DNA of 64,000 bases from Octopus sinensis (taxonomy: Eukaryota): NCBI RefSeq assembly GCF_006345805.1, contig NC_042997.1, positions 8,742,001 through 8,806,000 on the forward strand, in the 5' to 3' direction. The notes beneath the pieces were generated by a model. It did no database searches, was not told where the DNA came from, and saw nothing but the letters and a program-made list of their open reading frames with translations. Positions 16,920-57,765 of the stretch are shown here, piece after piece. Numbering within the stretch: position 1 is the stretch's first letter; the number at the start of each line of letters is the position of its first letter. The position numbers and the translations under genes were made by a program.

Positions 16920-17345
16920 CGTATATATCTCTTTCTCTTTACTCTTTTACATGTTTCAGTCATTTGACTGCAGCCATGCTGGAGCACCGCCTTCAGTCGA
17001 GCAAATCGACCCCGGGACTTATTCTTTGTAAGCCCAGTACTTATTCTATTGGTCTCTCTTTTGCCGAACCGCTAAGTAACGGGGACGTAAACACACCAGC
17101 ATCGATTGTCAAGCAATGCTAGGGGGACAAACACACACACACAAACACACACACATACACATATATACATATATATACATATATATACGACAGGATTCTT
17201 TCAGTTTCTGTCTACCAAATCCACTCACAAGGCATTGGTCGGCCCGGGGCTATAGCAGAAGACACTTGCCCAAGATGCCATGCAGTGGGACTGAACCCAG
17301 GACCATGTGGTTGGTTAGCAAACTACTTACCACACAGCCACTCCT
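16920..17345 (-). mobile_element. SINE family B
   Basis: Reverse complement of 57350-57765. Confidence 0.9.
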
Positions 17346-17914
17346 GGAGATGTAAGTTTGACCTTTTAGCTTTTAAAGAGCAATATCCAGCCCAAATATT
17401 CCACTGTTTTATTTTTAAACTGTCCACATCCAGCCTCACACACCTACCCTATAATATCATTCTAGAAGTAACCATCATCAAAATCTCAAAGCTACAAGCT
17501 AACGCAGGATTAATTCAAAATCATGTGAATAAATAAGTATTACATCTGACAGAGTAATCCAAATGGATTACATAGTTGAGATTATCTTCCTTACCTTCTC
17601 AAGTCATGGTGACTCAAAAGGGCTGGTTTTCCAGTTTCCATAATATATAGTATCATTGTATCATTATATATGTATATACGTTTTTATTATTATTTTGCAA
17701 TTTACTTAATCATCGGTATATTATTATTATTCTAATTTTAATATTTCTATTATATGTAATTTTCTAGATGGTGTAATTTAATTGTTCATTTTGAATTGAT
17801 AAAAGGTGTTTTTTCTAATTTTTATACATATATGTTATATTTTGTGAAATTTGATTTAGTATTTCTAAATTGAATTTTTCCCTGTAAGTTAGGAATAATA
17901 TTCCCTCAGATAAT

Positions 17915-17948
<34 letters not shown>

Positions 17949-18296
17949 TCCCCACTTGGATGGAACACTGGTCTGACACAGGATCACTCAGCAGAGTGGA
18001 CTGGAGCAATGTGAAAGGAAGTATTTTACTCAAGAACACAACACATCATCTAGTTCAAGAATCGAAACCACAATCTTACGATTATGAATCCAACACCCTA
18101 ACTACTAAGCCACATATCTCTGATTATAGCTGTGATTGCATCCCAATGATTAGCAGTTCACTTAAAGCTCAGAAAATGCTTCAGTGTCCAACAACCACTG
18201 ACATGCTACAGAACTCAGGTGACACTCACAATGGAAAATTCTGGCTGTACACACAGGATCCTAAATTGTACCCAGAAAAGAGGCCCCTAACTGGTA

Positions 18297-18620
18297 TATA
18301 GAGGAGAAGAAGAAGGGGAAGGGGAAGCGGGGAAGTGGGGGAAGGGGAAGAGGATGGGAAGGGCAGGAGAAGAAGGGGGAGGAAGAGGAGGAGGGGAAGA
18401 GGAGAAGGAAGGGCAGGAGGCGGGGAGAAGAAGAAGAAAAAGAAGAAGAAGAAGAAGAAGAAGAAGAAGAAGAAGACGATGACGACGAAGAAGAATAAGA
18501 AGAGAAAGAAGAAGAAGAAGAAGAAGAAGAAGAAGAAGAAGAAGAAGAAGAAGAGAAGAAGAAGAAGAAGAAGAAGAAGAAGAAGAAGAAGAAGAAGAAG
18601 AAGAAGAAGAAGAAGAAGAA
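18297..18620. repeat. Polypurine tract: G-run cluster followed by long (GAA)n
   Basis: Five G4-5 runs at 18315-18347, then GAA repeats. Confidence 0.95.
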
Positions 18621-18954
18621 TATACCCTTGTAGTTAACTGATACCTTATTTATCAACCTTCAAAATATAAAAAGGAAAGCTGATCTTGGCAGGATTTGAA
18701 ATCTGGGTGCCACAAAGCATTCTATCTGGCAATCTAATGGTTCTGCCAATCAGTTTCATTTAATGTAAAGCAAATATCATACAGGGCTTTACTCAAGGAG
18801 CACCGTTAATTCACTTTCTTTGTAGATATTCTCATGCTTTGCCAATGTATATCACTGAAATATACCAACACACATGCACACACACACACATACATTCAAT
18901 TACATACACTCATATATGTATGTATTTGTACATATATTTGTGTATGTGTATCTG

Positions 18955-20838: not shown

Positions 20839-21700
20839 ATGAGGTGTGGTGAATATATTGTCGTCTAAATTACGCAAAAATGAAAATAACACTAACATCT
20901 CATTTTTTAACAGGTATATTTGCCAAAATTGTATAAAAATATCTTGTAATGCTAAAGAATAAATTTATTCAATAAAATTGCCATTGGCTTCAGCCACAGC
21001 CTCCAGTCGACTTTCGAATTTTCTGCAACTCTTCTGGACGGTCTCTTTGTGTTAAAGTTGCTGAATGCTGCCACAACCCTTGCCTTCAGTTCATCTTTGG
21101 TGTTACAAGGAGTTTTGTCGGTCCCTCGCCACACATAATAATTAAGGGGGTTGCAGTCTGGGGAGTCAGGTGACTAGATGCTAGAGGTGATGTGGTCGCA
21201 GAAATTGTCTGACAGCCATGACTGGGTTCTCCTGCTTGTGTGGCATGGTGTAGTGTCCTGTTGCCAGACATAGGGTCTTCCATCAGCCACCCTCTTCACC
21301 CAGGGCAGCACTACCTGCTCCAGACACTTCATGTAGGCCTCTGTGTTGAGTCTGAGATCATGTGGGAAGATGAATGAAGGCGAAACTTTGCCATTGTAAG
21401 TGATCACTCCAAATACCATGATGTTGACTGGATGTTTAATTCTTATCACTCTGGTACATGTCCTCAGACTGACACACAAACACTCTGAAATGTTCGTATT
21501 GGAGCTTTTGGCATGAATGCCAAACAGTACAGCATATCATTTCCAAATTTCCAGCAGAGTGAATAGCATCATTGTGCTGTTTTCCTCACAGAAGGTGCCC
21601 AGCTGGCCCTACTATACTCTGTAATCAACAAAATCAAAAACAAACAATATGCATGCATGAAATTAAAAATACAAAATGGCAATACCAATCACACCCAGTA
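20839..21700 (-). mobile_element. Internally deleted Tc1/mariner (DD37D/maT-type) relic
   Basis: KHPVNIMVFGVIT...YVWQQDTTPCHTSRRTQSWL, SPDCNPLNY after a frameshift; degenerate TIRs. Confidence 0.75.
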
Positions 21701-26799: not shown

Positions 26800-28078
26800 C
26801 AGGGTGGAGAAGCAAAATTTACAATATTTTGAGGCAGGGATTGAAAGACAGTGTATGACCAATTAGTTTATTGAAAGTTATGAGAATTTATTTGTCACCA
26901 GAAAATTTACATAATAGAAAATGTTTTTTTCTATGTGTCCCCCTTCTTTCTCAATAACTGCCTTCACATGCTTCCTGAAACTTGCATGAGTGTTCCTCAA
27001 ATATTCGGGATACAACTTCTCCCATTCTTTTTTAATAGTATCTTTAAGAGAGTCGACATTGCTGTGTGATGTTCTATCAGTAGCATGGTCTTAAACGCCA
27101 ACAAATAGCATAATCCAGAGGGTTTATATCTGGGCTGGAAGGCGGCCATAAACATGATTTTAAAAAACTGCTAAAGTTGGATTTGCAAAAATCTTGTATT
27201 TTTCTAGCCATGTGGGCTGGAGCACCATCCTGTGTCCATACATAATTACCAGCAGGGTAGTTTACTTTAAGCCATGGCAATACCTGGTATCTCAGAGTCT
27301 TGTAGTAAGTATTAACATTGATCTTTTCGTCAGCTTTGTAGAATTTTATAGGCATTTTCTTTCCATTGGAAGCCACAACACCAAAAGCCATAACTTGAGC
27401 AGGATGTTTTGTTTTGAATGTCCCCTTAACCTCAGCTGTCGATTTTGTGATAAACCTGTCTTTTCTGCGGTTCAGAACAGCATCGACAGTGAAGATCTTT
27501 TCATTGTTACAATGGAGGACTTTTTCTTGAACCATGTAATAATTTTCTTGCACCTTTCCAATCTCTTTTCCTTCATAGCTGTTGTCAACAAGTGTTTTGG
27601 TGTTCTTGTGTAAGATTTTAACCTCAAATCATATTTTACTGCATTTCTAATGGTCTTGTTGACTACCTCAAGTTCAATTGCCATTTTACTCATGGATTGA
27701 GTTGGATCCTTTAGGATTTTGGATTTGAGAGCTTTAATAAAAGCTTTGGTACGTTTTTTGTTGATTCCTCCACTTCTAGACTTCCTCGTAATAGTTTTGC
27801 TCGTAGTCCTTCTATTCTTTACATTATAAACAGTCTTTATGGACACTCCAACTATTCTTGAAATCTCCTTTGGTGTGACGAGTGCATTCAGCAAATCACA
27901 CACTCTTTGACTTTTGCTTTCCTGATTACTCATATAGGCAAAAGTTTCTGAAAAGGTAATGATGATAGTGTTAGGCATGATTATGACATCCATATATGCT
28001 AGGTTTCAAAACAATTGACTTAGTGCCTGGTGAGAAAAAAAACTTAACGTTCATTGTAAATTTTGCTTCCCCATCCTA
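26800..28078 (-). mobile_element. Full-length DD37D (maT) Tc1/mariner transposon, transposase frameshifted
   Basis: ~26-bp TIRs (ggagaagcaaaatttacaat), TA flanks; ORFs 27472-27993 (HTH) and 27077-27553 (WTQDGAPAH...WPPSSPDINPLDY, 37 residues between the Ds); lesion at the first catalytic D. Confidence 0.92.
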
Positions 28079-28167: not shown

Positions 28168-30314
28168 ATGAAAGAAGACATCGCAGAATTCTGCAGAAAA
28201 TTAAGACTTACTGAGGAGCTATACGATAAATACAACGAGGACGAATCGTTAGCCAGAAATAGGAGTAACTACACCCCCTCGAAAGGTAAGAATAAAACAC
28301 TTGATGATTTCTGTGACCACATATCAAATTACCCATATCAACATATGCACAAACAAAAACACAAACCAAACTTCAGCAAAAAGAATGGGCTGAGTTGAAC
28401 AAATTAAAACTAGATAAAACAATAACAATCAAAGAGGCCGATAAAGGGAGTGCTGTTGTCTTAATGGATACGACATTTTACATAACTTTGGTACTTTCTA
28501 TGCTGGAAGACACAACATACTATGAAAAGGCACAAAACTACAGTCAACAAAAAATAATGAGGGAACTAAAATCCATATTAAACCCATACAAAGCAGGGCT
28601 AACCGACAAAGAATATGATTATATGACCAATTTCACAAGTAAAACTAGCCAATTCTACGGTATACCTAAGATCCACAAAAGTGAAAAAATAAGCAACGCA
28701 TGCAAGATAGCTACAGACAAAATAATTAAAGTCCCTAATCCTAATGACCTCAATTGATACCCATAATAGCAGGTCCCGCATGCGAAACCCACCGCCTCAG
28801 TAACTTTTTAGACACCCTGTTAAAACCACTCCTCAAACATGTCAAAAGCTATATAAGGGACGACTTAGATATGCTCAATCACCTACCGAATACTATAAAC
28901 AAAAACACCATACTGGTATCCTTCGATGTAGTCAACCTCTACTCCAATATCCCCCACAACCTAGGACTAGAGGCAATCCAATTCTGGCTAGAGAATCACG
29001 CCAACGAACTACCACACCGCATCAAAAAAGAATTTGTGATAGAAGGGGTTAAATTCATCCTGGAAAATAACTTCTTCGCCTTCAATGACAACTTCTACCG
29101 ACAAAAATCGGGGACTGCGATGGGTACACGAATGGCCCCCTCCTTTGCCAACCTAGTCATAGGATACCTAGAGATCAGTCTGTATCGTAAGGTTCTAGAA
29201 AGATATGGCAGCCCTTTCTCCATCTACATAGAAAACAACTGGAAGAGATATCTAGATGACTGTTTCATCCTTGGCATAAAAATATAGAAAAACTCATAGA
29301 ATTCCAGAAAATTTTAACGGACTGGACGTAAACATCCAATTCACGATGGAATATAGCCAACAACAACTCCCCTTCCTCGATATCCTCATTAAGAAGCTAA
29401 TAATATAATAGAAACAGACATATACTATAAGCCTACAGACTCTAAGCAATATCTTCCATTCAATTCATGCCACCCCAGACACACCAGGATGAATATCCCC
29501 TTCAATCTAGCAAAAAGGATATGCACTATAGTCTCTAACGCAAACACCAGAGACACACGACTACAAGAACTAAAAGATACCCTAATCACCAGGAACTATC
29601 CACCTTCACTTATTGACAAATGCATTCAACGTGCCCTTCAACTTAACATCAAGGAACTGAGACATCCCAAATCAAAGAAAAACTTACAACCAAAAGCCTT
29701 ACCATACATCTCCACACACAACCCTCTCAATAACGAAGCCTTCGACACCATCCTCCACAACATACCCCTCCTAAAAAAAGACCACAGAATGAACACAATC
29801 CTCCAAACACCACGATCATAAAAAGCAAAAGACAGCCTAGATCCATGAAAAGTCTCCTTACACAAGCCCGAATTCACTCTTCAACACAGAAGCCGACAGT
29901 AAAAAAATGTGGAAGACCCAATTGCGGGATATGCGACTATCTAATCGAGGGTTCTGAGTTCTCCTTCAAACAGGGACAACGTTTTACAGTGAAAAGCAAC
30001 TTCACATGTGCTTCGGAGAACCTAATATACTCACTAACCTGCTCCGGTGTCAAGAGCAGTACATAGGCCAAACAAAAAATGGTTTGCGTAAACGAATGGC
30101 CCTGCACAGATCCCAGATAAAAATTCCCCAAAACAGAAAAATAGCTTTTAGCCAACACATAGATACTTGCGCCAACAAAAAAACACCAAACTTCAGAATT
30201 TTCCCCCTCTACCAATTTAGGGACGATACAACCTCGAGACAACGAATAAGTAAAGAAAATCTCTTTATTACAAAATACAAGCCACTTCTTAACGGGTCTA
30301 CGACAAACAATTAA
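28168..30314 (+). pseudogene. Penelope RT/GIY-YIG ORF broken into at least 6 frames
   Basis: ORF track pieces 28168-28398, 28395-28757, 28754-29287, 29489-29821, 29845-30066, 30006-30314. Confidence 0.88.
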
Positions 30315-32869: not shown

Positions 32870-33290
32870 ATATATTTATATCTTTATCTTTATCTTTCTT
32901 TTCTTTTACTTTTTCTGTCATTTGACTGCAGCCATGCTGGAGCACCGCCTTTAGCCGAGCAAATCGACCCCGGGACTTATTCTTTGTAAGCCCAGTACTT
33001 ATTCTATCGGTCACTTTTGCCGAACCGCTAAGTGACGGGGACGTAAACACACCAGCAACGGTTGTCAAGCAATGCTAGGGGGACAAACACAAGCACACAA
33101 ACACACACACACACATATATATATACATATATACGACAGGCTTCTTTCAGTTTCCATCTACCAAATCCACTCACAAGGCATTGGTCGGCCCGGGGCTATA
33201 GCAGAAGACACTTGCCCAAGATGCCACGCAGTGGGACTGAACCCGGAACCATGTGGTTGGTTAGCAAGCTACTTACCACACAGCCACTTC
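32870..33290 (-). mobile_element. SINE family B
   Basis: Reverse complement of 57350-57765. Confidence 0.9.
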
Positions 33291-33807
33291 TGTGCCTATA
33301 TATATTCTTTTAATCTTTTAACCAGTTTTAGATATTGGACTCTAATCATAATGGGTTACTGAATGCAAGGACACAGTCATTTATATCAAACCCAAATATT
33401 TGACAATGGAAAACTATTTTATCCCCCACAGATGAATGGAATGTAGAGTTCACATGGGTATAATCTGAGTTCAAAAAGTAAACAAATACCACAAGGCACT
33501 TGCCCAAAACTATTTCGGTTATATTGATTCTATAATCCACCATCTATATGTATGGGCTTATTTTTGTTTTGGGGAAGTTTTTTATAACATATTCAGTTTA
33601 GCAGTGTTGTTGTTTGAGATGTGTGGAGTGAACAAACTGCACAGGGCTGTCACTTTTTAGACTTACGTTTGTAGTAGTTGAAGGTATGTTACATTTAAGG
33701 AAGGATGTTCCAATACATTACCAAATATGGTAGCCAAAACTCACACCATGCCACTGGAATTTGCCTCAATATATTCCTGACTTTTAAAGAATGAAAGATA
33801 AGGCTAG

Positions 33808-49243: not shown

Positions 49244-49530
49244 TCTCTAAGAAATTTATTCTGTGACAATTCTAATTTTCTCTACCAACAAGTGTACAAT
49301 CTTGTATAATCACTGAGGAATTCTCCTATCAATACTTCAACAAGTATAGGGAAATTTATGTTTCGCAGATGAGCTCAAAATATGTCTGGTTGAAATCTCT
49401 AAATAATTTATTCTGTGAACAGTTCTAATTTTCTACACAAATGAGTTCCCAATTTCGTACCATTCCTCAAAAATTTTCCCATCACTACTTCAACATATAT
49501 AGTTATTTGTCACAGATGAGTTCATTAAAA
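49244..49530. repeat. Diverged ~150-bp tandem duplication
   Basis: tctctaa.aatttattctgtga..ttctaattttct...acttcaaca.tatag...cagatgag.tc occurs twice. Confidence 0.7.
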
Positions 49531-49859
49531 GATGAAAATATGCATGGATATTTTCTCCCATTTTTTCCAGAATAACTAAAATAATATTCATCATTGACAA
49601 ATATAGTCTTTTCCTTTCTGCATAATTATTTTTAATTAACATTTTAATGTTTACTGCATTATATATGACGTCACTGACTAATTGTATCTATTGTATTTCT
49701 GTTTATTCATCAGACCTTAACTTTAGATATCAGAACACCTAGAAATAGACAGAAATATGAACATCATCTGTGTCCCTCATCACCATTATCCTCATCATTA
49801 TTACATCTGCTTTCTTATGCTGGTCTAGCAGTTTTTTTTATTTTTTATTTATGTACCCT

Positions 49860-50163
49860 TTTCTAGCCTAGCCAGGCTCATGAGCCCAGTTTCCTGTTTT
49901 CTGTGGTGTATGTGTTCCACCCCACCCCCCAGCTGGACAGGACGCCAGTCCATCACAGCGTTACTCAAGAAACAGGAAGAAAGAGTGAGAGAAAGTTGTG
50001 GTGAAAGAGTAAACAGGAGTCACCACCACCCCCTGCCAGAGCCTCATCGAGCTTTTTAGGTGTTTTCACTCAATAAACACACACAACACCTGGTCTGGGA
50101 ATTGAGATCGTGATCCTCAGACCACAAGTCCGCTGCCCTAACCACTGGGCCATTGCGCCTCCA
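49860..50163 (-). mobile_element. SINE family A (tail type 2)
   Basis: Reverse complement of 4576-4880. Confidence 0.85.
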
Positions 50164-50409
50164 CACTGGTCTGGCAGTAGAAACAGAAAGTTGTATATAA
50201 ACAAAGCTGGATCTCCTCCGGTTAGCAGTTCTGGATGAACCTACCTTGCAGCAAGAAACACAGATGGGTGCAGCAACATCAAACTCCTTCATTCACCAAA
50301 AGCTACACAACAGAAGTGGTTTAATGAAAGCATAGCATGGCTGCAGCTCTCATGCTGAAACTAGAAAAGGAATATATATATATATATATAAAGTTTGAGC
50401 CTAATTAGG

Positions 50410-50696
50410 CCATTTTTCTTTCTGGCTTTGCATGGCCACTCCACTAGCAATGTGCACCAAAGAAGAAAAAAGAGCAGTGAAATCAGTACAAGATACAGTG
50501 CTTTGCTGGCTAACAAACTGAAGCCAGCAATTCTCACCAAACGACGAAGCCTATTGTTGAAGAAAGTTTTGTTATTGCATGACAATGCATGCTCACACAT
50601 GGTCACTCAGACAGTTGAAAACATTAACCAATTGAGTTTTGAGGTGCTGGAACACCCTGCCTACAGCCCAGATCTCATCCCTTCCAACTATCATAA
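50410..50696 (+). mobile_element. Mariner (DD34D) transposase fragment
   Basis: VLLLHDNACSH...FEVLEHPAYSPDLIPSNYH; truncated at a TA array. Confidence 0.85.
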
Positions 50697-50731
50697 ATAT
50701 ATATACATATATATATATGCTTGTATGTATG

Positions 50732-50765
<34 letters not shown>

Positions 50766-51039
50766 GCAATAAAGGGTGGAATGTAATTAATTTGTAAGGA
50801 AATGTGAATATCTTCTCCGGACCTTTTGTGGGGGTGCGAGAAGCAATCACTTTCCGTTGCTTTTATATCCAGACTCTACCAGTCAAAGAAACACAAAACG
50901 CAGACGTAAAAAATAGATATACTTTATTGTTTTATGGTGAGAGATCAGTGGTATATCTGATGTCCTTGGTTCTGGGCGCGCAAGGCTGAAAGTTAATCGA
51001 TTGTAATATTTACAATGTTCAGTTGCTAAAAACAGAACG

Positions 51040-51360
51040 GGTCAAAAATGGCGTCCGGAGGAAGAAGATGATGTTTGTCTGCAACAATTCAGGTTAAAAG
51101 TCTTTGGCCAAAAGACTGCTGCTATCAAAACCGGAGAGAGAGCGAATTAAACGTCTGCTTCTATGAAAAGCCTGCCGCTGTCTGCCGGACGCCAATGGTC
51201 AATGCTTTACGCTCCCTTGCCTCTTTGTTAAGGCTCGCGCTCCCTTGCCTCTTTGTTAAGGCTCGCGCTCCCTTCGCCTAAATAAGCTAAGGCCACGTCA
51301 GCAAAATTCCCTCTTCCGGACTTCGTGTATTCGCGAGAGGGCGTTGCGCGCGCGCGCTGT
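51040..51360. promoter_or_regulatory. Housekeeping-type CpG-island promoter-like segment (second copy ~51990-52280)
   Basis: YY1-like aaaatggcg 51045, CCAAT 51192, CRE-like cacgtca 51294, ETS cttccgg 51313, tcgcgaga 51331, (GC)6 51346; CpG density far above the window background. Confidence 0.6.
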
Positions 51361-51623
51361 TGTATAGGATCACTACAAACAAGGGAAACAAAGGGAAAAA
51401 AAGAAAGGAAGAAAGAAAGAAAGACCAACAATTGAACCAATAAATTTTGAATGTGCAATTTACAAAAAAAAATGTTTTTTTTTTTGTTTTTTTTTTGTTT
51501 GTACTGTGTGCACAGAGAATAGAAAAAAATTCTTTTCTTTTGTTTTTACCAACCTTCGTCGCGTTTTAATCGAGAAAAAAAAATTTCTTCTTTTTTTTTT
51601 TTTTCTTCCGTGCGTGAGTGCAG

Positions 51624-51742
51624 ATGAAGAAACAAACTGTTGAAAGGGACTGGAAAACAGGTTGGTCGTGTTTCAGACTTGGCAGAAAAACTGGATTTTT
51701 TTCTTTTTGTTGAGTGCTCTCTGGAACTTCGGGGTCACCACT
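51624..51742 (+). pseudogene. Possible first coding exon with signal-peptide-like end (one T short in a homopolymer)
   Basis: ATG...KTGFF(F)FLLSALWNFGVTT then gtaagg donor; in frame only if the T7 run is T8. Confidence 0.3.
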
Positions 51743-52655
51743 GTAAGGAAATGTGAATATCTTCTCCGGACCTTTTGGGGGGGTGCGAGAAGCAATCACT
51801 TTCCGTTGCTTTTATATCCAGACTCTACCAGTCAAAGAAACACAAAACGCAGACGTAAAAAATAGATATACTTTATTGTTTTATGGTGAGAGATCAGTGG
51901 TATATCTGATGTCCTTGGTTCTGGGCGCGCAAGGCTGAAAGTTAATCGATTGTAATATTTACAATGTTCAGTTGCTAAAAACAGAACGGGTCAAAAATGG
52001 CGTCTGGAGGAAGAAGATGATGTTTGTCTGCAACAATTCAGGTTAAAAGTCTTTGGCCAAAAGACTGCTGCTATCAAAACCGGAGAGAGAGCGAATTAAA
52101 CGTCTGCTTCTATGAAAAGCCTGCCGCTGTCTGCCGGACGCCAATGGTCAATGCTTTACGCTCCCTTGCCTCTTTGTTAAGGCTCGCGCTCCCTTCGCCT
52201 AAATAAGCTAAGGCCACATCAGCAAAATTCCCTCTTCCGGACTTCGTGTATTCGCGAGAGGGCGTTGCGCGCGCGCGCTGTTGTATAGGATCACTACAAA
52301 TTTAATAAAATTAATCAATTTCACCTAGTAGATTTGTCGGTATGGAAAAGACCATATTTGGTAAGGGTTATAATAATTATAATTAAGGGTTAAATGCAAC
52401 AAGTTGCTCAAAACCACATACCGAAAATATTAGAAATAGCAGCCAAAATTGGTACCTATTTCCTCTACTAGTAAAAAGTCTCCACAAACAAACAGAATTT
52501 GTAAGCTGTATATGGCAAAAAAGGCAGAAAATAACAAAAACCCAGCCTGTGGATTAATTATAGACGACTCGTTTCTGGATTAGAACCGAAGGTTCATTTC
52601 CTTGTCAATATAATATTTCCTATAGATCTAGAAATGCTAGGGGAAAAAAACTTAC

Positions 52656-52766
52656 CCGTTACACCAGTACGATCTGCGACATCGGACAGCCTAACGGAAC
52701 TGCTAGCATTCCTGCACCTATGCCGACATGCGAATTCATATTTCCCTCCAAAATTTACCACGTGAG
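52656..52766 (-). CDS. Candidate 111-nt symmetric exon (AHVVNFGGKYEFACRHRCRNASSSVRLSDVADRTGVT)
   Basis: gtttttgtag acceptor, G/gtaagt donor, phase 1-1, GC/CpG-rich. Confidence 0.45.
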
Positions 52767-53431
52767 CTACAAAAACGTTACCAACGAAACGAAAAATTCG
52801 GAGATAACTTGTAAGGGAGCAAAAGTATTCAATATGCAATAAAGGGTGGAATGTAATTAATTTAATAAAATTAATCAATTTCGCCTAGTAGATTTGTCGG
52901 TATGGAAAAGACCATATTTGGTAAGGGTTATAATAATTATAATTAAGGGTTAAATGCAACAAGTTGCTCAAAACCACATACCGAAAATATTAGAAATAGC
53001 AGCCAAAATTGGTACCTATTTCCTCTACTAGTAAAATGTCTCCACAAACAAACAGAATTTGTAAGCTGTATATGGCAAAAAAGGCAGAAAATAACGAAAA
53101 CCCAGCCTGTGGATTAATTATAGATGACTCATTTCTGGATTAGAACCGAAGGTTCATTTCCTTGTCAAGCATTTCAAGATCTATAGGAAATATTATATTG
53201 ACAAGGAAATGAACCTTCGGTTCTAATCCAGAAACGAGTCATCTATAATTAATCCACAGGCTGGGTTTTCGTTATTTTCTGCCTTTTTTGCCATATACAG
53301 CTTACAAATTCTGTTTGTTTGTGGAGACTTTTTACTAGTAGAGGAAATAGGTACCAATTTTGGCTGCTATTTCTAATAATTTCGGTATGTGGTTTTGAGC
53401 AACTTGTTGCATTTAACCCTTATATATATAT

Positions 53432-54565
53432 GTGCGGGCCATGTATAGGGACGCTGCTAGTAGGGTGAGGGTTGGAAACGAGTACAGTGAAGAATTCCGG
53501 GTAGAGGTAGGGGTCCACCAAGGCTCAGTACTCAGCCCCCTCCTATTTATCATAGTCCTCCAGGCAATAACGGAGGAATTCAAGACAGGATGCCCTTGGG
53601 AGCTCCTCTATGCTGATGACCTTGCTCTAATTGCTGAGTCGCTATCAGAACTGGAGGAGAAGTTTCAGGTGTGGAAACAAGGATTAGAATCGAAGGGCCT
53701 CAGAGTCAATCTAGCTAAAACCAAAGTCGTAATCAGTAGGAAGGTAGACAAATCACACACGCCTTCAGGTAGATGGCCCTGCTCGATCTGTAGAAAAGGT
53801 GTAGGTAGAAACTCTATAAGATGCACCAAGTGTAAGCTATGGACACATAAGAGGTGCAGCAATGTCAAAGGAAGGCTAACTAGGAAGATGGTTTTTGTAT
53901 GTGGCAGATGCTCAGGAACAATAAACACTGAAAATGCTCTGAGACCAACTTCCGTCACTTTCCAGGGAGAAAAACTAGAAATAGTTGATAGTTTCCGTTA
54001 CCTAGGTGACCAAGTCAGCAGCGGAGGCGGGTGTGCTGAAAGTGTAACTGCTAGAGTAAGAATAGCTTGGGCAAAGTTCAGAGAGCTCTTACCCCTGCTG
54101 GTGACAAAAGGCCTCTCGCACAGAGTGAAAGGCAGACTGTATGATGCGTGTGTACGAACAGCCATGCTACATGGCAGTGAAACATGGGCCGTGACTGCTG
54201 AGGATATGCGTAAGCTTGCAAGAAATGAAGCCAGTATGCTCCGATGGATGTGTAATGTCAGTGTTCATAATCGACAGAGTGTAAGTACCTTGAGAGAAAA
54301 GCTGGACCTAAGAAGCATCAGTTGTGGTGTGCAAGAGAGACGATTGCGCTGGTATGGTCATGTGGCGAGAATGGATGAAGATAGTTGTGTGAAAAAGTAC
54401 CACACCCTAGCGGTTGAGGGAACCTGTGGAAGAGGCAGACCCAGGAAAACCTGGGACGAGGTGGTGAAGCACGACCTCCGAACTTTAGGTCTCACTGAGG
54501 AAATGACTAGAGACCGAGTCCTATGGAAGTGTGCTGTGCGCGAGAAGACCCGGCAGGACAAGTGA
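53432..54565 (+). CDS. RTE ORF2 C-terminal half (RT domains 4-7 with PHD-like C4HC3 insertion)
   Basis: GVHQGSVLSPLLF, LLYADDL, FRYLG, LHGSETW, RRLRWYGHVARM, RGRPRKTW. Confidence 0.93.
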   Translation: MRAMYRDAASRVRVGNEYSEEFRVEVGVHQGSVLSPLLFIIVLQAITEEFKTGCPWELLYADDLALIAESLSELEEKFQVWKQGLESKGLRVNLAKTKVVISRKVDKSHTPSGRWPCSICRKGVGRNSIRCTKCKLWTHKRCSNVKGRLTRKMVFVCGRCSGTINTENALRPTSVTFQGEKLEIVDSFRYLGDQVSSGGGCAESVTARVRIAWAKFRELLPLLVTKGLSHRVKGRLYDACVRTAMLHGSETWAVTAEDMRKLARNEASMLRWMCNVSVHNRQSVSTLREKLDLRSISCGVQERRLRWYGHVARMDEDSCVKKYHTLAVEGTCGRGRPRKTWDEVVKHDLRTLGLTEEMTRDRVLWKCAVREKTRQDK

Positions 54566-54639
54566 GTCCATAACCTGTGGCCTTCTACTTGGGATGGAGC
54601 CAGCCTACGTATGCATACCTTCCCTTCTTGGGACACAAA

Positions 54640-54930
54640 ACTCTACTTGTGAAGACCTGTTGAGGCAAGTGAGGATCAGAATCGAAATCGATCAATGGAA
54701 ATTGCAGATGTGTTACCAGTGCCGGTGGCATGTCGATACTCTACTTGTGAAGACCCGTTGAGGCAAGTGAGGATCAGAAATGGAAATTGATCAATGGAAA
54801 TTGCAGATGTGTTACCAGTGCCGGTGGCATGTCGAAACTCTACTTGTGAAGACCCGTTGAGGCAAGTGAGGATCAGAATGGAAATCGATCAATGGAAATT
54901 GCAGATGTGTTACCAGTGCCGGTGGCATGT
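54640..54930 (+). repeat. Three ~98-bp tandem units in the RTE 3' UTR
   Basis: Units start at 54640, 54738, 54837. Confidence 0.9.
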
Positions 54931-55353
54931 AAGAGAACCTTCCATTTCGCGACCGTTGCCAGCACCGCCCCGTTTCGTGTCCGTTGCCAGCCTCGCCTGG
55001 CCCTTGTGCCGGTGGCACATATAAAGCACCATCCGTTCGTGGCCGTTTGCCAGCTCTGTCTGGCACCTGTGCGGGTGGCACGTAAAAAGCACCCACTACA
55101 CTCACGGAGTGGTTGGCGTTAGGAAGGGCATCCAGCCGTAGAAACACTGCCAGATTTGACTGGGCCTGATGAAGCCTTCTAGCTTCACAGACCCCAGTAG
55201 AACCGTCCAACCCATGCTAGCATGGAAAGCGGACGCTAAACAATGATGATGATGATGATGATGATGATATATGTATATAAATATAATCACTTCACATGAG
55301 TTTTCCAGTCCATCTACATGTGTGCTGAAGCTTGCTACAGAATTTCTGCTTAG

Positions 55354-55830: not shown

Positions 55831-55864
<34 letters not shown>

Positions 55865-55865
<1 letters not shown>

Positions 55866-56538
55866 GGTGCAGGAGTGGCTGTGTGGTAAGTAGCTTGCTT
55901 ACCAAAAACATGGTTCCGAGTTCAGTCCCACTGCGTGGCATCTTGGGCAAGTGTCTTCTGCTATAGCCCCGGGTCGACCAATGCCTTGTGAGTGGATTTG
56001 TTAGACGGAAACTGAAAGAAGCCTGTCATATATATGTATATATATATATATATGTGTGTGTATATGTTTGTGTGTCTGTATTTGTCCCCCTAGCATTGCT
56101 TGACAACCGATGCTAGTGTGTTTATGTCCCCGTAACTTAACGGTTCGGCAAAAGAGACCGATAGAATAAGTACTGGGCTTACAAAGAATAAGTCCCGGGG
56201 TCGATCTGCTCGACTAAAAGGCGGTGCTCCAGCATGGCCGCAGTCAAATGACTGAAACAAGTAAAAGAGAGAAAGAAAGATATATATATATATATTATAT
56301 ATATATATATATATGTGTGTGTATATGTTTGTGTGTCTGTATTTGTCCCCCTAGCATTGCTTGACAACCGATGCTAGTGTGTTTATGTCCCCGTAACTTA
56401 ACGGTTCGGCAAAAGAGACCGATAGAATAAGTACTGGGCTTACAAAGAATAAGTCCCGGGGTCGATCTGCTCGACTAAAAGGCGGTGCTCCAGCATGGCC
56501 GCAGTCAAATGACTGAAACAAGTAAAAGAGAGAAAGAA

Positions 56539-57349: not shown

Positions 57350-57765
57350 TGGCGCAGGAGTGGCTGTGTGGTAAGTAGCTTGCTAACCAACCACATGGTT
57401 CCGGGTTCAGTCCCACTGCGTGGCACCTTGGGCAAGTGTCTTCTGCTATAGCCTCGGGCCGACCAAAGCCTTGTGAGTGGATTTGGTAGACGGAAACTGA
57501 AAGAAGCCTGTCGTATATATGTATATATATATGTATGCGTATGTGTGTTTGTGTGTCTGTGTTTGTCCCCCTAGCATTGCTTGACAACCGATGCTGGTAT
57601 GTTTATGTCCCCGTTACTTAGCGGTTCGGCAAAAGAGACCGATAGAATAAGTACAGGGCTTACAAAAGAATAAGTCCCGGGGTCGAGTTGTTCGATTAAA
57701 GGCGGTGCTCCAGCATGGCCGCAGTCAAATGACTGAAACAAGTAAAAGAGAGAGTAAAAGAGTAA
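57350..57765 (+). mobile_element. SINE family B, full length
   Basis: tRNA-like head ggcgcaggagtggctgtgtggtaag...ggttcagtccc, CORE-like ccttgggcaag, internal microsatellite, tail gtaaaagag repeats. Confidence 0.92.

What the first reader, a model, noticed from the sequence alone, without database searches (positions are those of the whole stretch)
50762..53422. Shattered CpG-island/exon cassette with two ~1.5-fold (circularly permuted-looking) duplications
Seen: the order is A-B-D-B-E-F-A-E-inv(E), bounded by TA arrays. Unit B+D (949-bp period) and unit E+F+A (560-bp period) are each present about 1.5 times, joined with 1-2-nt microhomologies (t at 50793/51742; aa at 52299/52859). The content is promoter-like (ETS, CRE, CCAAT, YY1, (GC)6) plus exon-like pieces in opposite orientations. 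Inference: this looks like serial template switching (FoSTeS/MMBIR) or integration of rolling-circle copies of small circular DNAs from a gene 5' end. It could act as a relocated or duplicated promoter.
Basis: partly seen in the sequence, partly recalled or inferred. Interest (0 to 1): 0.75.

Follow-up and report, generated by a model that had tools for sequence, protein, structure and literature searches.

The report
LTR retroelement nested in local duplication
The "shattered promoter cassette" in this Octopus window is mostly ordinary: a small non-coding LTR-type retroelement inserted into a stretch of DNA that had already been duplicated in tandem and partly folded back on itself.

Summary

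The two halves have different origins.
- **B-D-B (50793-52298, 1,506 bp).** This has the anatomy of a non-autonomous LTR-type retroelement on the minus strand. It has two direct repeats of 557 and 585 bp, each running TG...CA, and a 4-bp target-site duplication (AATT). Copy A2-E2 preserves the matching empty site. Two bases after the 5' LTR there is a 12-nt exact complement of the tRNA-Trp 3' end, unique in the window. No polypurine tract precedes the 3' LTR, so strict family membership is not established.
- **A/E-F-A/E-inv(E).** This is a 560-bp tandem duplication followed by a later fold-back. The arms are about 231 bp with a 29-nt loop, and the junctions show 1-4 nt of microhomology.

Differences between copies are mostly CpG transitions with no indels, which argues against an assembly artefact. 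No protein or RNA family matches the "exon-like" pieces. The promoter-like motifs sit in the LTR. No other copies could be found because no Octopus genome DNA search was available. Interest is low.

The parts
50693..50765 (.). Left (TA)n microsatellite bordering the cassette
   Evidence: TRF reports period 2 with 37 copies. Many similar arrays occur elsewhere in the window.
50762..50792 (+). A1: the first 31 bp of copy 1 of the 337-bp repeat (A+E), cut off from the rest by the retroelement
   Evidence: 32/32 identical to 52832-52863. It joins colinearly to 52303-52608 once the insert is removed.
50789..50792 (.). Left copy of the 4-bp target-site duplication AATT
   Evidence: AATT occurs at 50789-50792 and 52299-52302, and once at 52859-52862 in the uninterrupted copy.
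50793..51377 (-). 3' LTR of the retroelement (segment B1, 585 bp, TGTAGTG...CCTTACA on the minus strand); it carries one extra 28-bp tandem unit
   Evidence: Direct repeat of 51742-52298 with 3 substitutions. Termini shown. The 28-bp unit is present 2.5 times at 51210-51279. Motifs listed.
51378..51741 (-). Internal region (segment D, 364 bp): non-coding, full of A-run/T-run hairpins. Its end next to the 3' LTR is polypyrimidine on the element's sense strand, so there is no polypurine tract.
   Evidence: Sequence. Only 2 of the 20 bases upstream of the 3' LTR are purines. The ORFs match no family. Internal repeats D4/D5.
51729..51740 (-). Primer-binding site TGGTGACCCCGA, complementary to the last 12 nt of tRNA-Trp including CCA, 1 nt after the 5' LTR's terminal CA
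   Evidence: The reverse complement of human tRNA-Trp begins TGGTGACCCCGACG (bioRxiv 10.1101/400127). This is the only match in the window on either strand; 0.09 expected even allowing one mismatch. Context.
51742..52298 (-). 5' LTR of the retroelement (segment B2, 557 bp)
   Evidence: On the minus strand it carries AATAAA at 51877-51872, followed by a GT-rich stretch, and TATAAA at 51816-51811.
52299..52302 (.). Right copy of the target-site duplication AATT
52303..52608 (+). E1: the remainder of copy 1 of the 337-bp repeat
   Evidence: 98.4% identical to 52859-53168; 4 of the 5 differences are CpG transitions.
52609..52831 (.). F: 223-bp single-copy spacer between the two repeat copies. It is CpG-rich (observed/expected 1.32) and its first 30 nt recur in the inverted copy.
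   Evidence: The 94-aa ORF across it has no homologue.
52832..53168 (+). A2+E2: copy 2 of the 337-bp repeat, uninterrupted. It holds the empty site for the retroelement at 52859-52862.
   Evidence: The joined flanks of copy 1 match it over 337 bases with 5 mismatches and no gap.
53169..53197 (-). Loop of the fold-back: the reverse complement of the first ~30 nt of F, with no forward partner in copy 2
   Evidence: junction strings.
53198..53422 (-). inv(E): inverted copy of E (equivalent to 52384-52608), forming a near-perfect palindrome with E2
   Evidence: It shares the derived T at the 52565 equivalent with E2.
53423..53431 (.). Right short TA array
53432..55268 (+). Flank: a 5'-truncated LINE with an RT and PHD-like ORF, 99-bp repeats and an (ATG)n tail. 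It is not part of the cassette.
   Evidence: Pfam RVT_1 hit. Tandem repeats. 90-94% identical to an O. vulgaris copy that extends further 5'.
50395..50690 (+). Flank: fragment of a Tc1/mariner-type transposase gene. It is not part of the cassette.
   Evidence: Weak DDE_3 hit. The translation ends ...HPAYSPDLIPSNYH.

Best explanation
The cassette was built in steps in an Octopus intergenic or intronic stretch rich in transposon remains.

1. A 560-bp stretch (A+E+F) next to a TA microsatellite was duplicated in tandem. The junction F|A shares 3-4 nt (ATA/ATAT) with the array edge.
2. Later, the second copy suffered a fold-back. Synthesis or repair ran to 53168, then continued on the complementary strand 30 nt further on and copied back to the equivalent of 52384. 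It ended in TA repeats. The result is a 231-bp-arm palindrome.
3. Most recently, a 1,506-bp non-coding LTR-type retroelement integrated on the minus strand between A and E of copy 1, duplicating AATT.

The likely life cycle of that element follows the standard LTR-retrotransposon model. It is transcribed from its LTR, which carries ETS, CRE, CCAAT, YY1-like and TATA motifs plus AATAAA with a GT-rich element. The RNA is packaged by an autonomous Ty3-like partner supplying the proteins. Reverse transcription is primed by tRNA-Trp at the primer-binding site, and an integrase inserts the copy through its TG...CA ends.

Shown directly: the repeat map, the filled and empty sites, the 4-bp duplication, the TG...CA ends, the primer-binding-site match, the shared derived substitution, and the lack of coding capacity.

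Inferred: the retrotransposition mechanism, the existence of a partner element, the order of step 3 relative to step 2, and the replication or repair mechanism of steps 1 and 2.
For: **Filled versus empty site.** Removing 50793-52298 and one AATT joins A1 to E1 into 337 bp that is colinear with A2E2, with 5 mismatches and no gap.

**LTR features.** Both repeats read TGTAAGG...CACTACA. They differ by 3 substitutions in 557 bases plus a 28-bp tandem unit.

**Primer-binding site.** The minus strand reads ...CCTTACA g TGGTGACCCCGA. That is the complement of the last 12 nt of tRNA-Trp. It occurs once in the 128 kb searched on both strands, with 0.09 expected at up to one mismatch. The composition-based probability at a fixed position is 1.1e-8.

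**Orientation.** TATAAA and AATAAA occur only on the same strand as the primer-binding site.

**Non-coding.** No Pfam family or homologue was found for any ORF.

**Precedent.** A 4-bp target duplication in AT-rich DNA is what animal TRIMs produce (PMC3532108). Ty3-like LTR families exist in Octopus vulgaris (PMC13282606).

**Copies are real and have aged.** 2 of 3 substitutions in B and 4 of 5 in E are CpG transitions, with no indels.

**Ordered events.** E2 and inv(E) share a TpG where E1 has CpG.

**Host.** The window shares LINE and SINE families with O. vulgaris.
Against: **No polypurine tract.** The 20 nt before the 3' LTR on the element's sense strand hold 2 purines. The long purine run abutting that LTR is on the opposite strand. 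A canonical LTR retrotransposon needs this tract to prime plus-strand synthesis, so either the internal region changed after insertion or the element is atypical.

**No second copy found.** None in this window, in one 21-kb O. vulgaris locus, or in the metagenome, prokaryote and viral collections. Multi-copy status is therefore unproven.

**Weak statistics on timing.** The lower divergence of the LTR pair compared with E1/E2 is not significant (p = 0.14). The shared CpG change could be a parallel mutation.

**Origin of A+E+F is unknown.** It could itself be a repeat family.
Confidence: 0.65

Rival explanations
1. One reading: the whole A-B-D-B-E-F-A-E-inv(E) cassette arose in one complex replication-based event (FoSTeS/MMBIR). 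Pieces of a gene's 5' end were copied through serial microhomology-mediated template switches.
For: Junctions show only 1-5 nt of shared sequence. A fold-back with a short loop is typical of template switching. TA arrays prone to secondary structure lie on both sides.
Against: - B-D-B sits between a duplicated AATT, and an intact empty site survives in the sister copy.
- Its ends are TG...CA, and a 12-nt tRNA-Trp primer-binding site lies exactly at the repeat boundary. A template switch predicts none of these.
- E2 and inv(E) share a derived change that E1 lacks, so the duplication and the fold-back were separated in time.
- No coding or exon evidence was found.
Confidence: 0.08
2. Reintegrated rolling-circle copies of two small circular DNAs of 949 bp and 560 bp, each present about 1.5 times.
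For: Both units look circularly permuted, at 1.59 and 1.55 copies. For the 560-bp unit nothing excludes this.
Against: For the 949-bp unit, the start and end of the '1.6 turns' coincide with TG and CA, with a target duplication and with a primer-binding site. That is the linear LTR-internal-LTR product of reverse transcription, not an arbitrary cut of a concatemer. For the 560-bp unit, a simple in-place tandem duplication needs fewer steps. No donor locus was found.
Confidence: 0.07
3. The 337-bp A+E repeat is itself an LTR, either a solo LTR or the ends of a second tiny LTR element with F as its internal region. The cassette would then be two nested LTR elements plus an aberrant inverted partial copy.
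For: A+E can be read as TGCAAT...CCTTGTCA, that is TG...CA. Copy 1 is flanked by ATATA on both sides, at 50760-50764 and 52608-52612. Animal TRIMs prefer TA-rich targets with ATAT-type duplications. The inverted piece comprises the 3' part of the repeat plus the first 30 nt of F.
Against: - There is no TGG-initiated primer-binding site after either repeat end on either strand, and no polypurine tract abuts the second copy.
- ATATA next to a TA array carries little information.
- The repeat boundaries are ambiguous by 1-4 nt, so TG...CA is weak evidence.
- Copy 2 has no matching duplication.
Confidence: 0.12
4. Assembly or amplification artefact: a chimeric or palindromic long read, or collapsed repeats.
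For: Short-loop palindromes and partial tandem copies are classic artefacts of long-read and MDA chimeras.
Against: - The copies differ by substitutions, mostly CpG transitions, and by no homopolymer indels. This is the signature of in-vivo decay in a CpG-depleted genome (window observed/expected 0.39).
- The three E copies give a consistent tree.
- The nested insertion has a clean target duplication.
Confidence: 0.04
5. A functional relocated or duplicated host promoter and first exon (CpG island) driving a local transcript.
For: B and F are CpG-rich relative to the genome. B carries ETS, CRE, CCAAT, YY1-like and TATA motifs. LTRs can act as promoters.
Against: - The motifs lie in a mobile-element LTR.
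- The CRE is already destroyed by a CpG transition in one copy (51297 G versus 52218 A), which suggests methylation and decay rather than a protected island.
- No exon or coding signal was found.
- The neighbourhood consists of transposon remains.
Confidence: 0.05

Closest known systems
Small non-autonomous LTR retrotransposons of animals (TRIM type), e.g. PbTRIM of the harvester ant (PMC3532108)
   Same: - Direct terminal repeats flanking a short non-coding internal region.
- A 4-bp target-site duplication in AT-rich DNA.
- A tRNA-complementary primer-binding site right after the 5' LTR.
- Regulatory signals in the LTR.
- Near-identical LTRs.
   Different: - The LTRs are 557-585 bp and the element is 1,506 bp, against 152-184 bp and 480-781 bp in PbTRIM.
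- The primer is tRNA-Trp rather than tRNA-Leu.
- No polypurine tract precedes the 3' LTR.
- Copy number and an autonomous partner were not shown.
Autonomous Ty3-like LTR retrotransposons reported in Octopus vulgaris (PMC13282606)
   Same: The LTR / primer-binding-site / integrase-type insertion signature. These are the likely source of the proteins that mobilised the element.
   Different: No gag or pol remnant is present here, and no sequence link to any described family could be tested.
Fold-back (inverted) duplications and tandem duplications from replication template switching or hairpin-capped breaks (FoSTeS/MMBIR class)
   Same: The E-F-A-E-inv(E) half shows a 560-bp tandem copy and an inverted copy separated by a 29-nt single-copy loop. 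Junctions have 1-4 nt of microhomology, and structure-prone TA repeats lie next to it.
   Different: The scale is small (hundreds of bp) and the two steps are separated in time. The mechanism is inferred from junction anatomy only.
Plant retrozymes (PMC4918200, PMC5680766)
   Same: Non-autonomous LTR-type elements with a 4-bp target duplication, whose LTR-plus-internal unit of 600-1000 nt could circularise. Here that unit is 949 nt.
   Different: The defining hammerhead ribozyme in the LTR is absent.

Membership tests
LTR retrotransposon (non-autonomous, TRIM/LARD-like) | Two near-identical direct long terminal repeats | tested here: met
   50793-51377 versus 51742-52298: 3 substitutions plus a 28-bp tandem unit.
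LTR retrotransposon (non-autonomous, TRIM/LARD-like) | Each LTR starts with TG and ends with CA | tested here: met
   TGTAAGG...CACTACA on the plus strand, TGTAGTG...CCTTACA on the minus strand, in both copies.
LTR retrotransposon (non-autonomous, TRIM/LARD-like) | 4-6-bp target-site duplication | tested here: met
   AATT at 50789-50792 and 52299-52302. The empty site at 52859-52862 lies in the paralogous copy, and the joined flanks are colinear with it.
LTR retrotransposon (non-autonomous, TRIM/LARD-like) | Primer-binding site complementary to a tRNA 3' end, just downstream of the 5' LTR | tested here: met
   TGGTGACCCCGA at 51740-51729 on the minus strand, 1 nt after the LTR. It equals the first 12 nt of the reverse complement of human tRNA-Trp with CCA and is unique in the window. 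Octopus tRNA-Trp was not available.
LTR retrotransposon (non-autonomous, TRIM/LARD-like) | Polypurine tract immediately upstream of the 3' LTR on the sense strand | tested here: not met
   The 20 nt upstream read TTCCCTTTGTTTCCCTTGTT, with 2 purines. The nearest purine-rich runs lie about 95 nt or more away.
LTR retrotransposon (non-autonomous, TRIM/LARD-like) | No gag/pol coding capacity (non-autonomous) | tested here: met
   No Pfam hit for any ORF of B or D, and no homologues.
LTR retrotransposon (non-autonomous, TRIM/LARD-like) | Dispersed multi-copy family with solo LTRs and an autonomous partner | not testable with these tools
   No Octopus genome DNA search was available. No copy in the window, in L001 or in the other collections.
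TRIM in the strict sense | Miniature size (LTRs roughly 100-250 bp, element under about 1 kb) | tested here: not met
   LTRs are 557 and 585 bp and the element is 1,506 bp. PbTRIM has 152-184-bp LTRs and 480-781-bp elements.
Retrozyme | Hammerhead ribozyme in each LTR | tested here: not met
   Rfam scan of 49500-54500 at E up to 1 found no hammerhead, only sub-threshold hits to generic hairpins.
FoSTeS/MMBIR complex rearrangement | Junctions with microhomology, no target-site duplication and no mobile-element termini | tested here: not met
   For B-D-B the junctions carry a target duplication, TG...CA ends and a primer-binding site. For the F|A2 junction (ATA/ATAT) and the E2|inv junction (1 nt), the feature is compatible.
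FoSTeS/MMBIR complex rearrangement | Segments templated from identifiable nearby donor loci | not testable with these tools
   No donor in the 64-kb window. The genome was not searchable.
Helitron | 5'-TC ... CTRR-3' ends inserted between A and T, with a 3' subterminal hairpin | tested here: not met
   The cassette ends read TGCAAT... and ...AACCCTTA on the plus strand, and TAAGGG... on the minus strand.
Penelope-like element with pseudo-LTRs | RT plus GIY-YIG ORF, or a hammerhead in the repeats, with tandem or inverted partial copies sharing the same 3' end | tested here: not met
   No such ORF or ribozyme in the cassette. The two outer ends map to different positions of the 560-bp unit.
Host CpG-island promoter with first exon | CpG observed/expected above 0.6 with GC above 50% over more than 200 bp, and a conserved coding or UTR exon | tested here: inconclusive
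   CpG observed/expected is 1.1 in B and 1.3 in F, but GC is 0.41-0.48. No homologue for any reading frame. No expression data.

The most novel reading that the evidence does not exclude
B-D-B may represent a working class of Octopus LTR-type elements that transpose without a conventional polypurine tract. In that case the neighbouring tandem and fold-back copies of A+E would be aberrant products of the same reverse-transcription and integration machinery, for example strong-stop-like snap-back DNA joined to an LTR end, rather than host replication errors. The locus would then record recent retroelement activity of an unusual kind in a cephalopod, within roughly the last one to two million years.
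Probability: 0.08. Interest if true: 0.5.

Novelty: new variant of a known kind. Interest (0 to 1): 0.2.

Why it matters
The main value is as a correction. A structure that reads like chromosome shattering, or like reinserted circles from a gene promoter, resolves into a nested mobile-element insertion plus a small local duplication and fold-back. Such structures are common in repeat-rich genomes.

Two points have modest value.
- The locus is a clean example of an apparently young, small, non-coding LTR-type element in Octopus, with 0.5% LTR divergence and an intact target duplication. LTR elements are a minor and little-described repeat class in that genus.
- The missing polypurine tract is a concrete oddity. 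It can be checked as soon as other copies are collected from the genome.

Tried and rejected
**Searches that found nothing**
- Other copies inside the window: blastn with word size 11 found none.
- Known RNAs and tRNAs: Rfam gave only sub-threshold hits on the hairpin and the TA array, and ARAGORN found no tRNA.
- Coding or exon hypothesis: Pfam found nothing in B, D or F. The 94-aa F ORF had no candidate in the 5.8-billion protein set. Against 1.84 billion representatives it gave one spurious repeat-protein hit at 38 bits.
- ORFs of B, D and E: a mixed alignment of six of them found nothing, and exact look-ups found nothing.
- Exact DNA patterns for the U5/primer-binding-site junction, the LTR core and E: nothing in the metagenome, prokaryote-genome or viral collections. 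This was expected, since none of these holds cephalopod genomes.
- One O. vulgaris locus fetched through a LINE protein: it shares the window's LINE and SINE families but holds no cassette copy. Further random sampling was judged too unlikely to hit.

**Readings considered and rejected**
- Helitron, piggyBac or Tc1-type MITE readings of the cassette ends: rejected from the end sequences.
- Penelope-like pseudo-LTR arrangement and retrozyme: rejected.
- A polypurine tract in either orientation of B-D-B: none found. An internal inversion that would restore one is conceivable but unsupported.
Full report
**Setting**

The window is AT-rich (36% GC), CpG-depleted (observed/expected 0.39) and full of transposon remains.
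- Tc1/mariner-type transposase fragments, a Penelope-like RT plus GIY-YIG element, and LINE RT ORFs are present.
- The LINE ORF next to the finding is 84-85% identical to proteins of Octopus bimaculoides and O. vulgaris.
- A 21-kb O. vulgaris locus shares the window's LINE (90-94%) and SINE families.

The window is therefore Octopus nuclear DNA.

The cassette sits between a mariner-type fragment followed by a (TA)37 array on the left, and a short TA run followed by a 5'-truncated LINE on the right.

**Check of the observation**

- A is 32/32 identical at 50762 and 52832.
- B (50793-51379 and 51742-52300, period 949) has 3 substitutions plus one extra 28-bp tandem unit.
- E (52299-52608 and 52859-53168, period 560) has 5 substitutions.
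- 53168-53422 is the reverse complement of 52384-52638.

E2 and inv(E) fold into a hairpin of -267 kcal/mol, z = -57. The Rfam 'microRNA' hits there are sub-threshold responses to that hairpin.

Nothing supports 'exon-like'. No reading frame of B, D, E or F matches a Pfam family or any protein in the large collections.

**B-D-B is an insertion, not a 1.5-fold duplication**

Deleting 50793-52298 and one copy of AATT joins A1 to E1. The joined 337 bp runs colinear with A2-E2, with five mismatches and no gap. Copy 2 therefore preserves the unoccupied target, and copy 1 is the occupied one with AATT duplicated on both sides.

The inserted piece begins TGTAAGG and ends CACTACA, and so does each of its two terminal repeats.

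Read on the minus strand, the upstream repeat ends ...CCTTACA. After one base comes TGGTGACCCCGA. The reverse complement of human tRNA-Trp, including CCA, printed in bioRxiv 10.1101/400127, begins TGGTGACCCCGACG. This 12-mer is therefore the complement of the tRNA's last 12 nucleotides.

It occurs nowhere else in the window on either strand, with 0.09 matches expected even allowing one mismatch. Its composition-based probability at a fixed position is about 1e-8. Allowing for a few offsets, two orientations and some fifty tRNA ends, chance is of order 1e-5.

TATAAA, and AATAAA followed by a GT-rich stretch, lie on the same strand.

Direct repeats with TG...CA ends, a 4-bp target duplication and a tRNA primer-binding site define integrase-mediated insertion of an LTR retroelement. 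An animal TRIM family shows the same 4-bp duplications in TA-rich DNA (PMC3532108). Ty3-like LTR families are reported in O. vulgaris (PMC13282606).

The element has no coding capacity, so it must have been mobilised by proteins supplied by another element. That is an inference.

**The feature that does not fit**

On the element's sense strand, the 20 nt before the 3' LTR are TTCCCTTTGTTTCCCTTGTT, with two purines. The conspicuous purine run abutting that LTR is on the wrong strand.

A canonical LTR element needs a polypurine tract there. I therefore do not file this as a proven member of the TRIM family. The LTRs, at 557-585 bp, are also too long for a strict TRIM.

Either the internal region was altered after insertion or the family is atypical. 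Other genomic copies would decide between these.

There is no hammerhead ribozyme, so it is not a retrozyme.

**The other half**

Without the insert, the structure is (TA)n - [A+E] - F - [A+E] - loop - inverted E - (TA)n.

The simplest history has two steps.
- A 560-bp tandem duplication. Its junction (F|A2) shares ATA/ATAT with the edge of the TA array.
- A fold-back. Copy 2 stops at 53168 and continues with the reverse complement of the sequence from 30 nt further on, back to the equivalent of 52384. There is 1 nt of shared sequence at the junction, and the piece ends in TA repeats.

This is the kind of junction anatomy expected from replication template switching or hairpin-mediated repair.

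An alternative is that A+E is itself an LTR, since it can be read as TG...CA with ATATA on both sides of copy 1. It lacks any primer-binding site and rests on low-information TA-rich sequence.

**Timing and reality**

Differences between copies are substitutions, mostly CpG transitions (2 of 3 in B, 4 of 5 in E), with no indels. That is the decay pattern of a methylated, CpG-depleted genome, not the error pattern of a chimeric read.

E2 and inv(E) share TpG where E1 keeps CpG. The fold-back therefore copied the E2 lineage after it had separated from E1.

The LTR pair (3/557) is less diverged than E1/E2 (5/310), as expected if the insertion came last. The difference is not significant (p = 0.14).

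Using the rough calibration implied in PMC13282606 (Jukes-Cantor distance 0.09 at 25 million years), these divergences correspond to about one and two million years. This is my own arithmetic and carries very wide error.

One CpG transition has already destroyed the CRE motif in one LTR. That speaks against a protected, active CpG island.

**Limits**

No tool here searches cephalopod genomic DNA. All attempts to reach other copies failed, whether through ORF-based protein look-ups, exact DNA patterns in the available collections, or one sampled O. vulgaris locus. Copy number, the autonomous partner and the origin of A+E+F therefore remain open.

**Verdict**

The object is a nested mobile-element insertion in a small local tandem and fold-back duplication. 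It is ordinary for a repeat-rich genome, with one minor oddity: the missing polypurine tract.

Noticed in passing
window 28395-30314 (+): Penelope-like retroelement remnant. Consecutive ORFs carry an RVT_1 reverse-transcriptase domain and, downstream, a GIY-YIG nuclease domain.
   Followed up: partly
window 27077-27993 (-), 21174-21479 (-), 50395-50690 (+): Several Tc1/mariner-type transposase fragments from different families, with HTH and DDE_3 hits.
   Followed up: partly
window 53432-55268 (+): 5'-truncated LINE whose ORF combines RVT_1 with a PHD-like zinc finger. Downstream are a 99-bp x 3 tandem repeat (54638-54930), a 63-bp x 1.9 repeat and an (ATG)8.7 tail. It is 90-94% identical to a copy on O. 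vulgaris OX597814.1.
   Followed up: partly
window 16929-17346, 32902-33313, 55857-56280, 57351-57750: Copies of one ~400-bp SINE-like repeat, 84-89% identical to a copy in the O. vulgaris locus L001. Their spurious ORFs share the peptide ...AIAEDTCPRCHAVGLNPEPCGWLASYLPH.
   Followed up: no
window 51378-51741: The retroelement's internal region contains four A-run/T-run hairpin motifs spaced about 55 and 108 bp apart (families D4/D5). A ~47-nt purine run abuts the 3' LTR on the antisense strand. This is unexplained.
   Followed up: partly
window 51295-51300 versus 52216-52221: The CRE-like TGACGT is intact in one LTR and changed to TGATGT in the other by a CpG transition.
   Followed up: yes
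window 18261-18656: Long low-complexity tract, a poly-purine/poly-pyrimidine stretch that gives poly-Ser, poly-Lys and poly-Phe ORFs on both strands.
   Followed up: no
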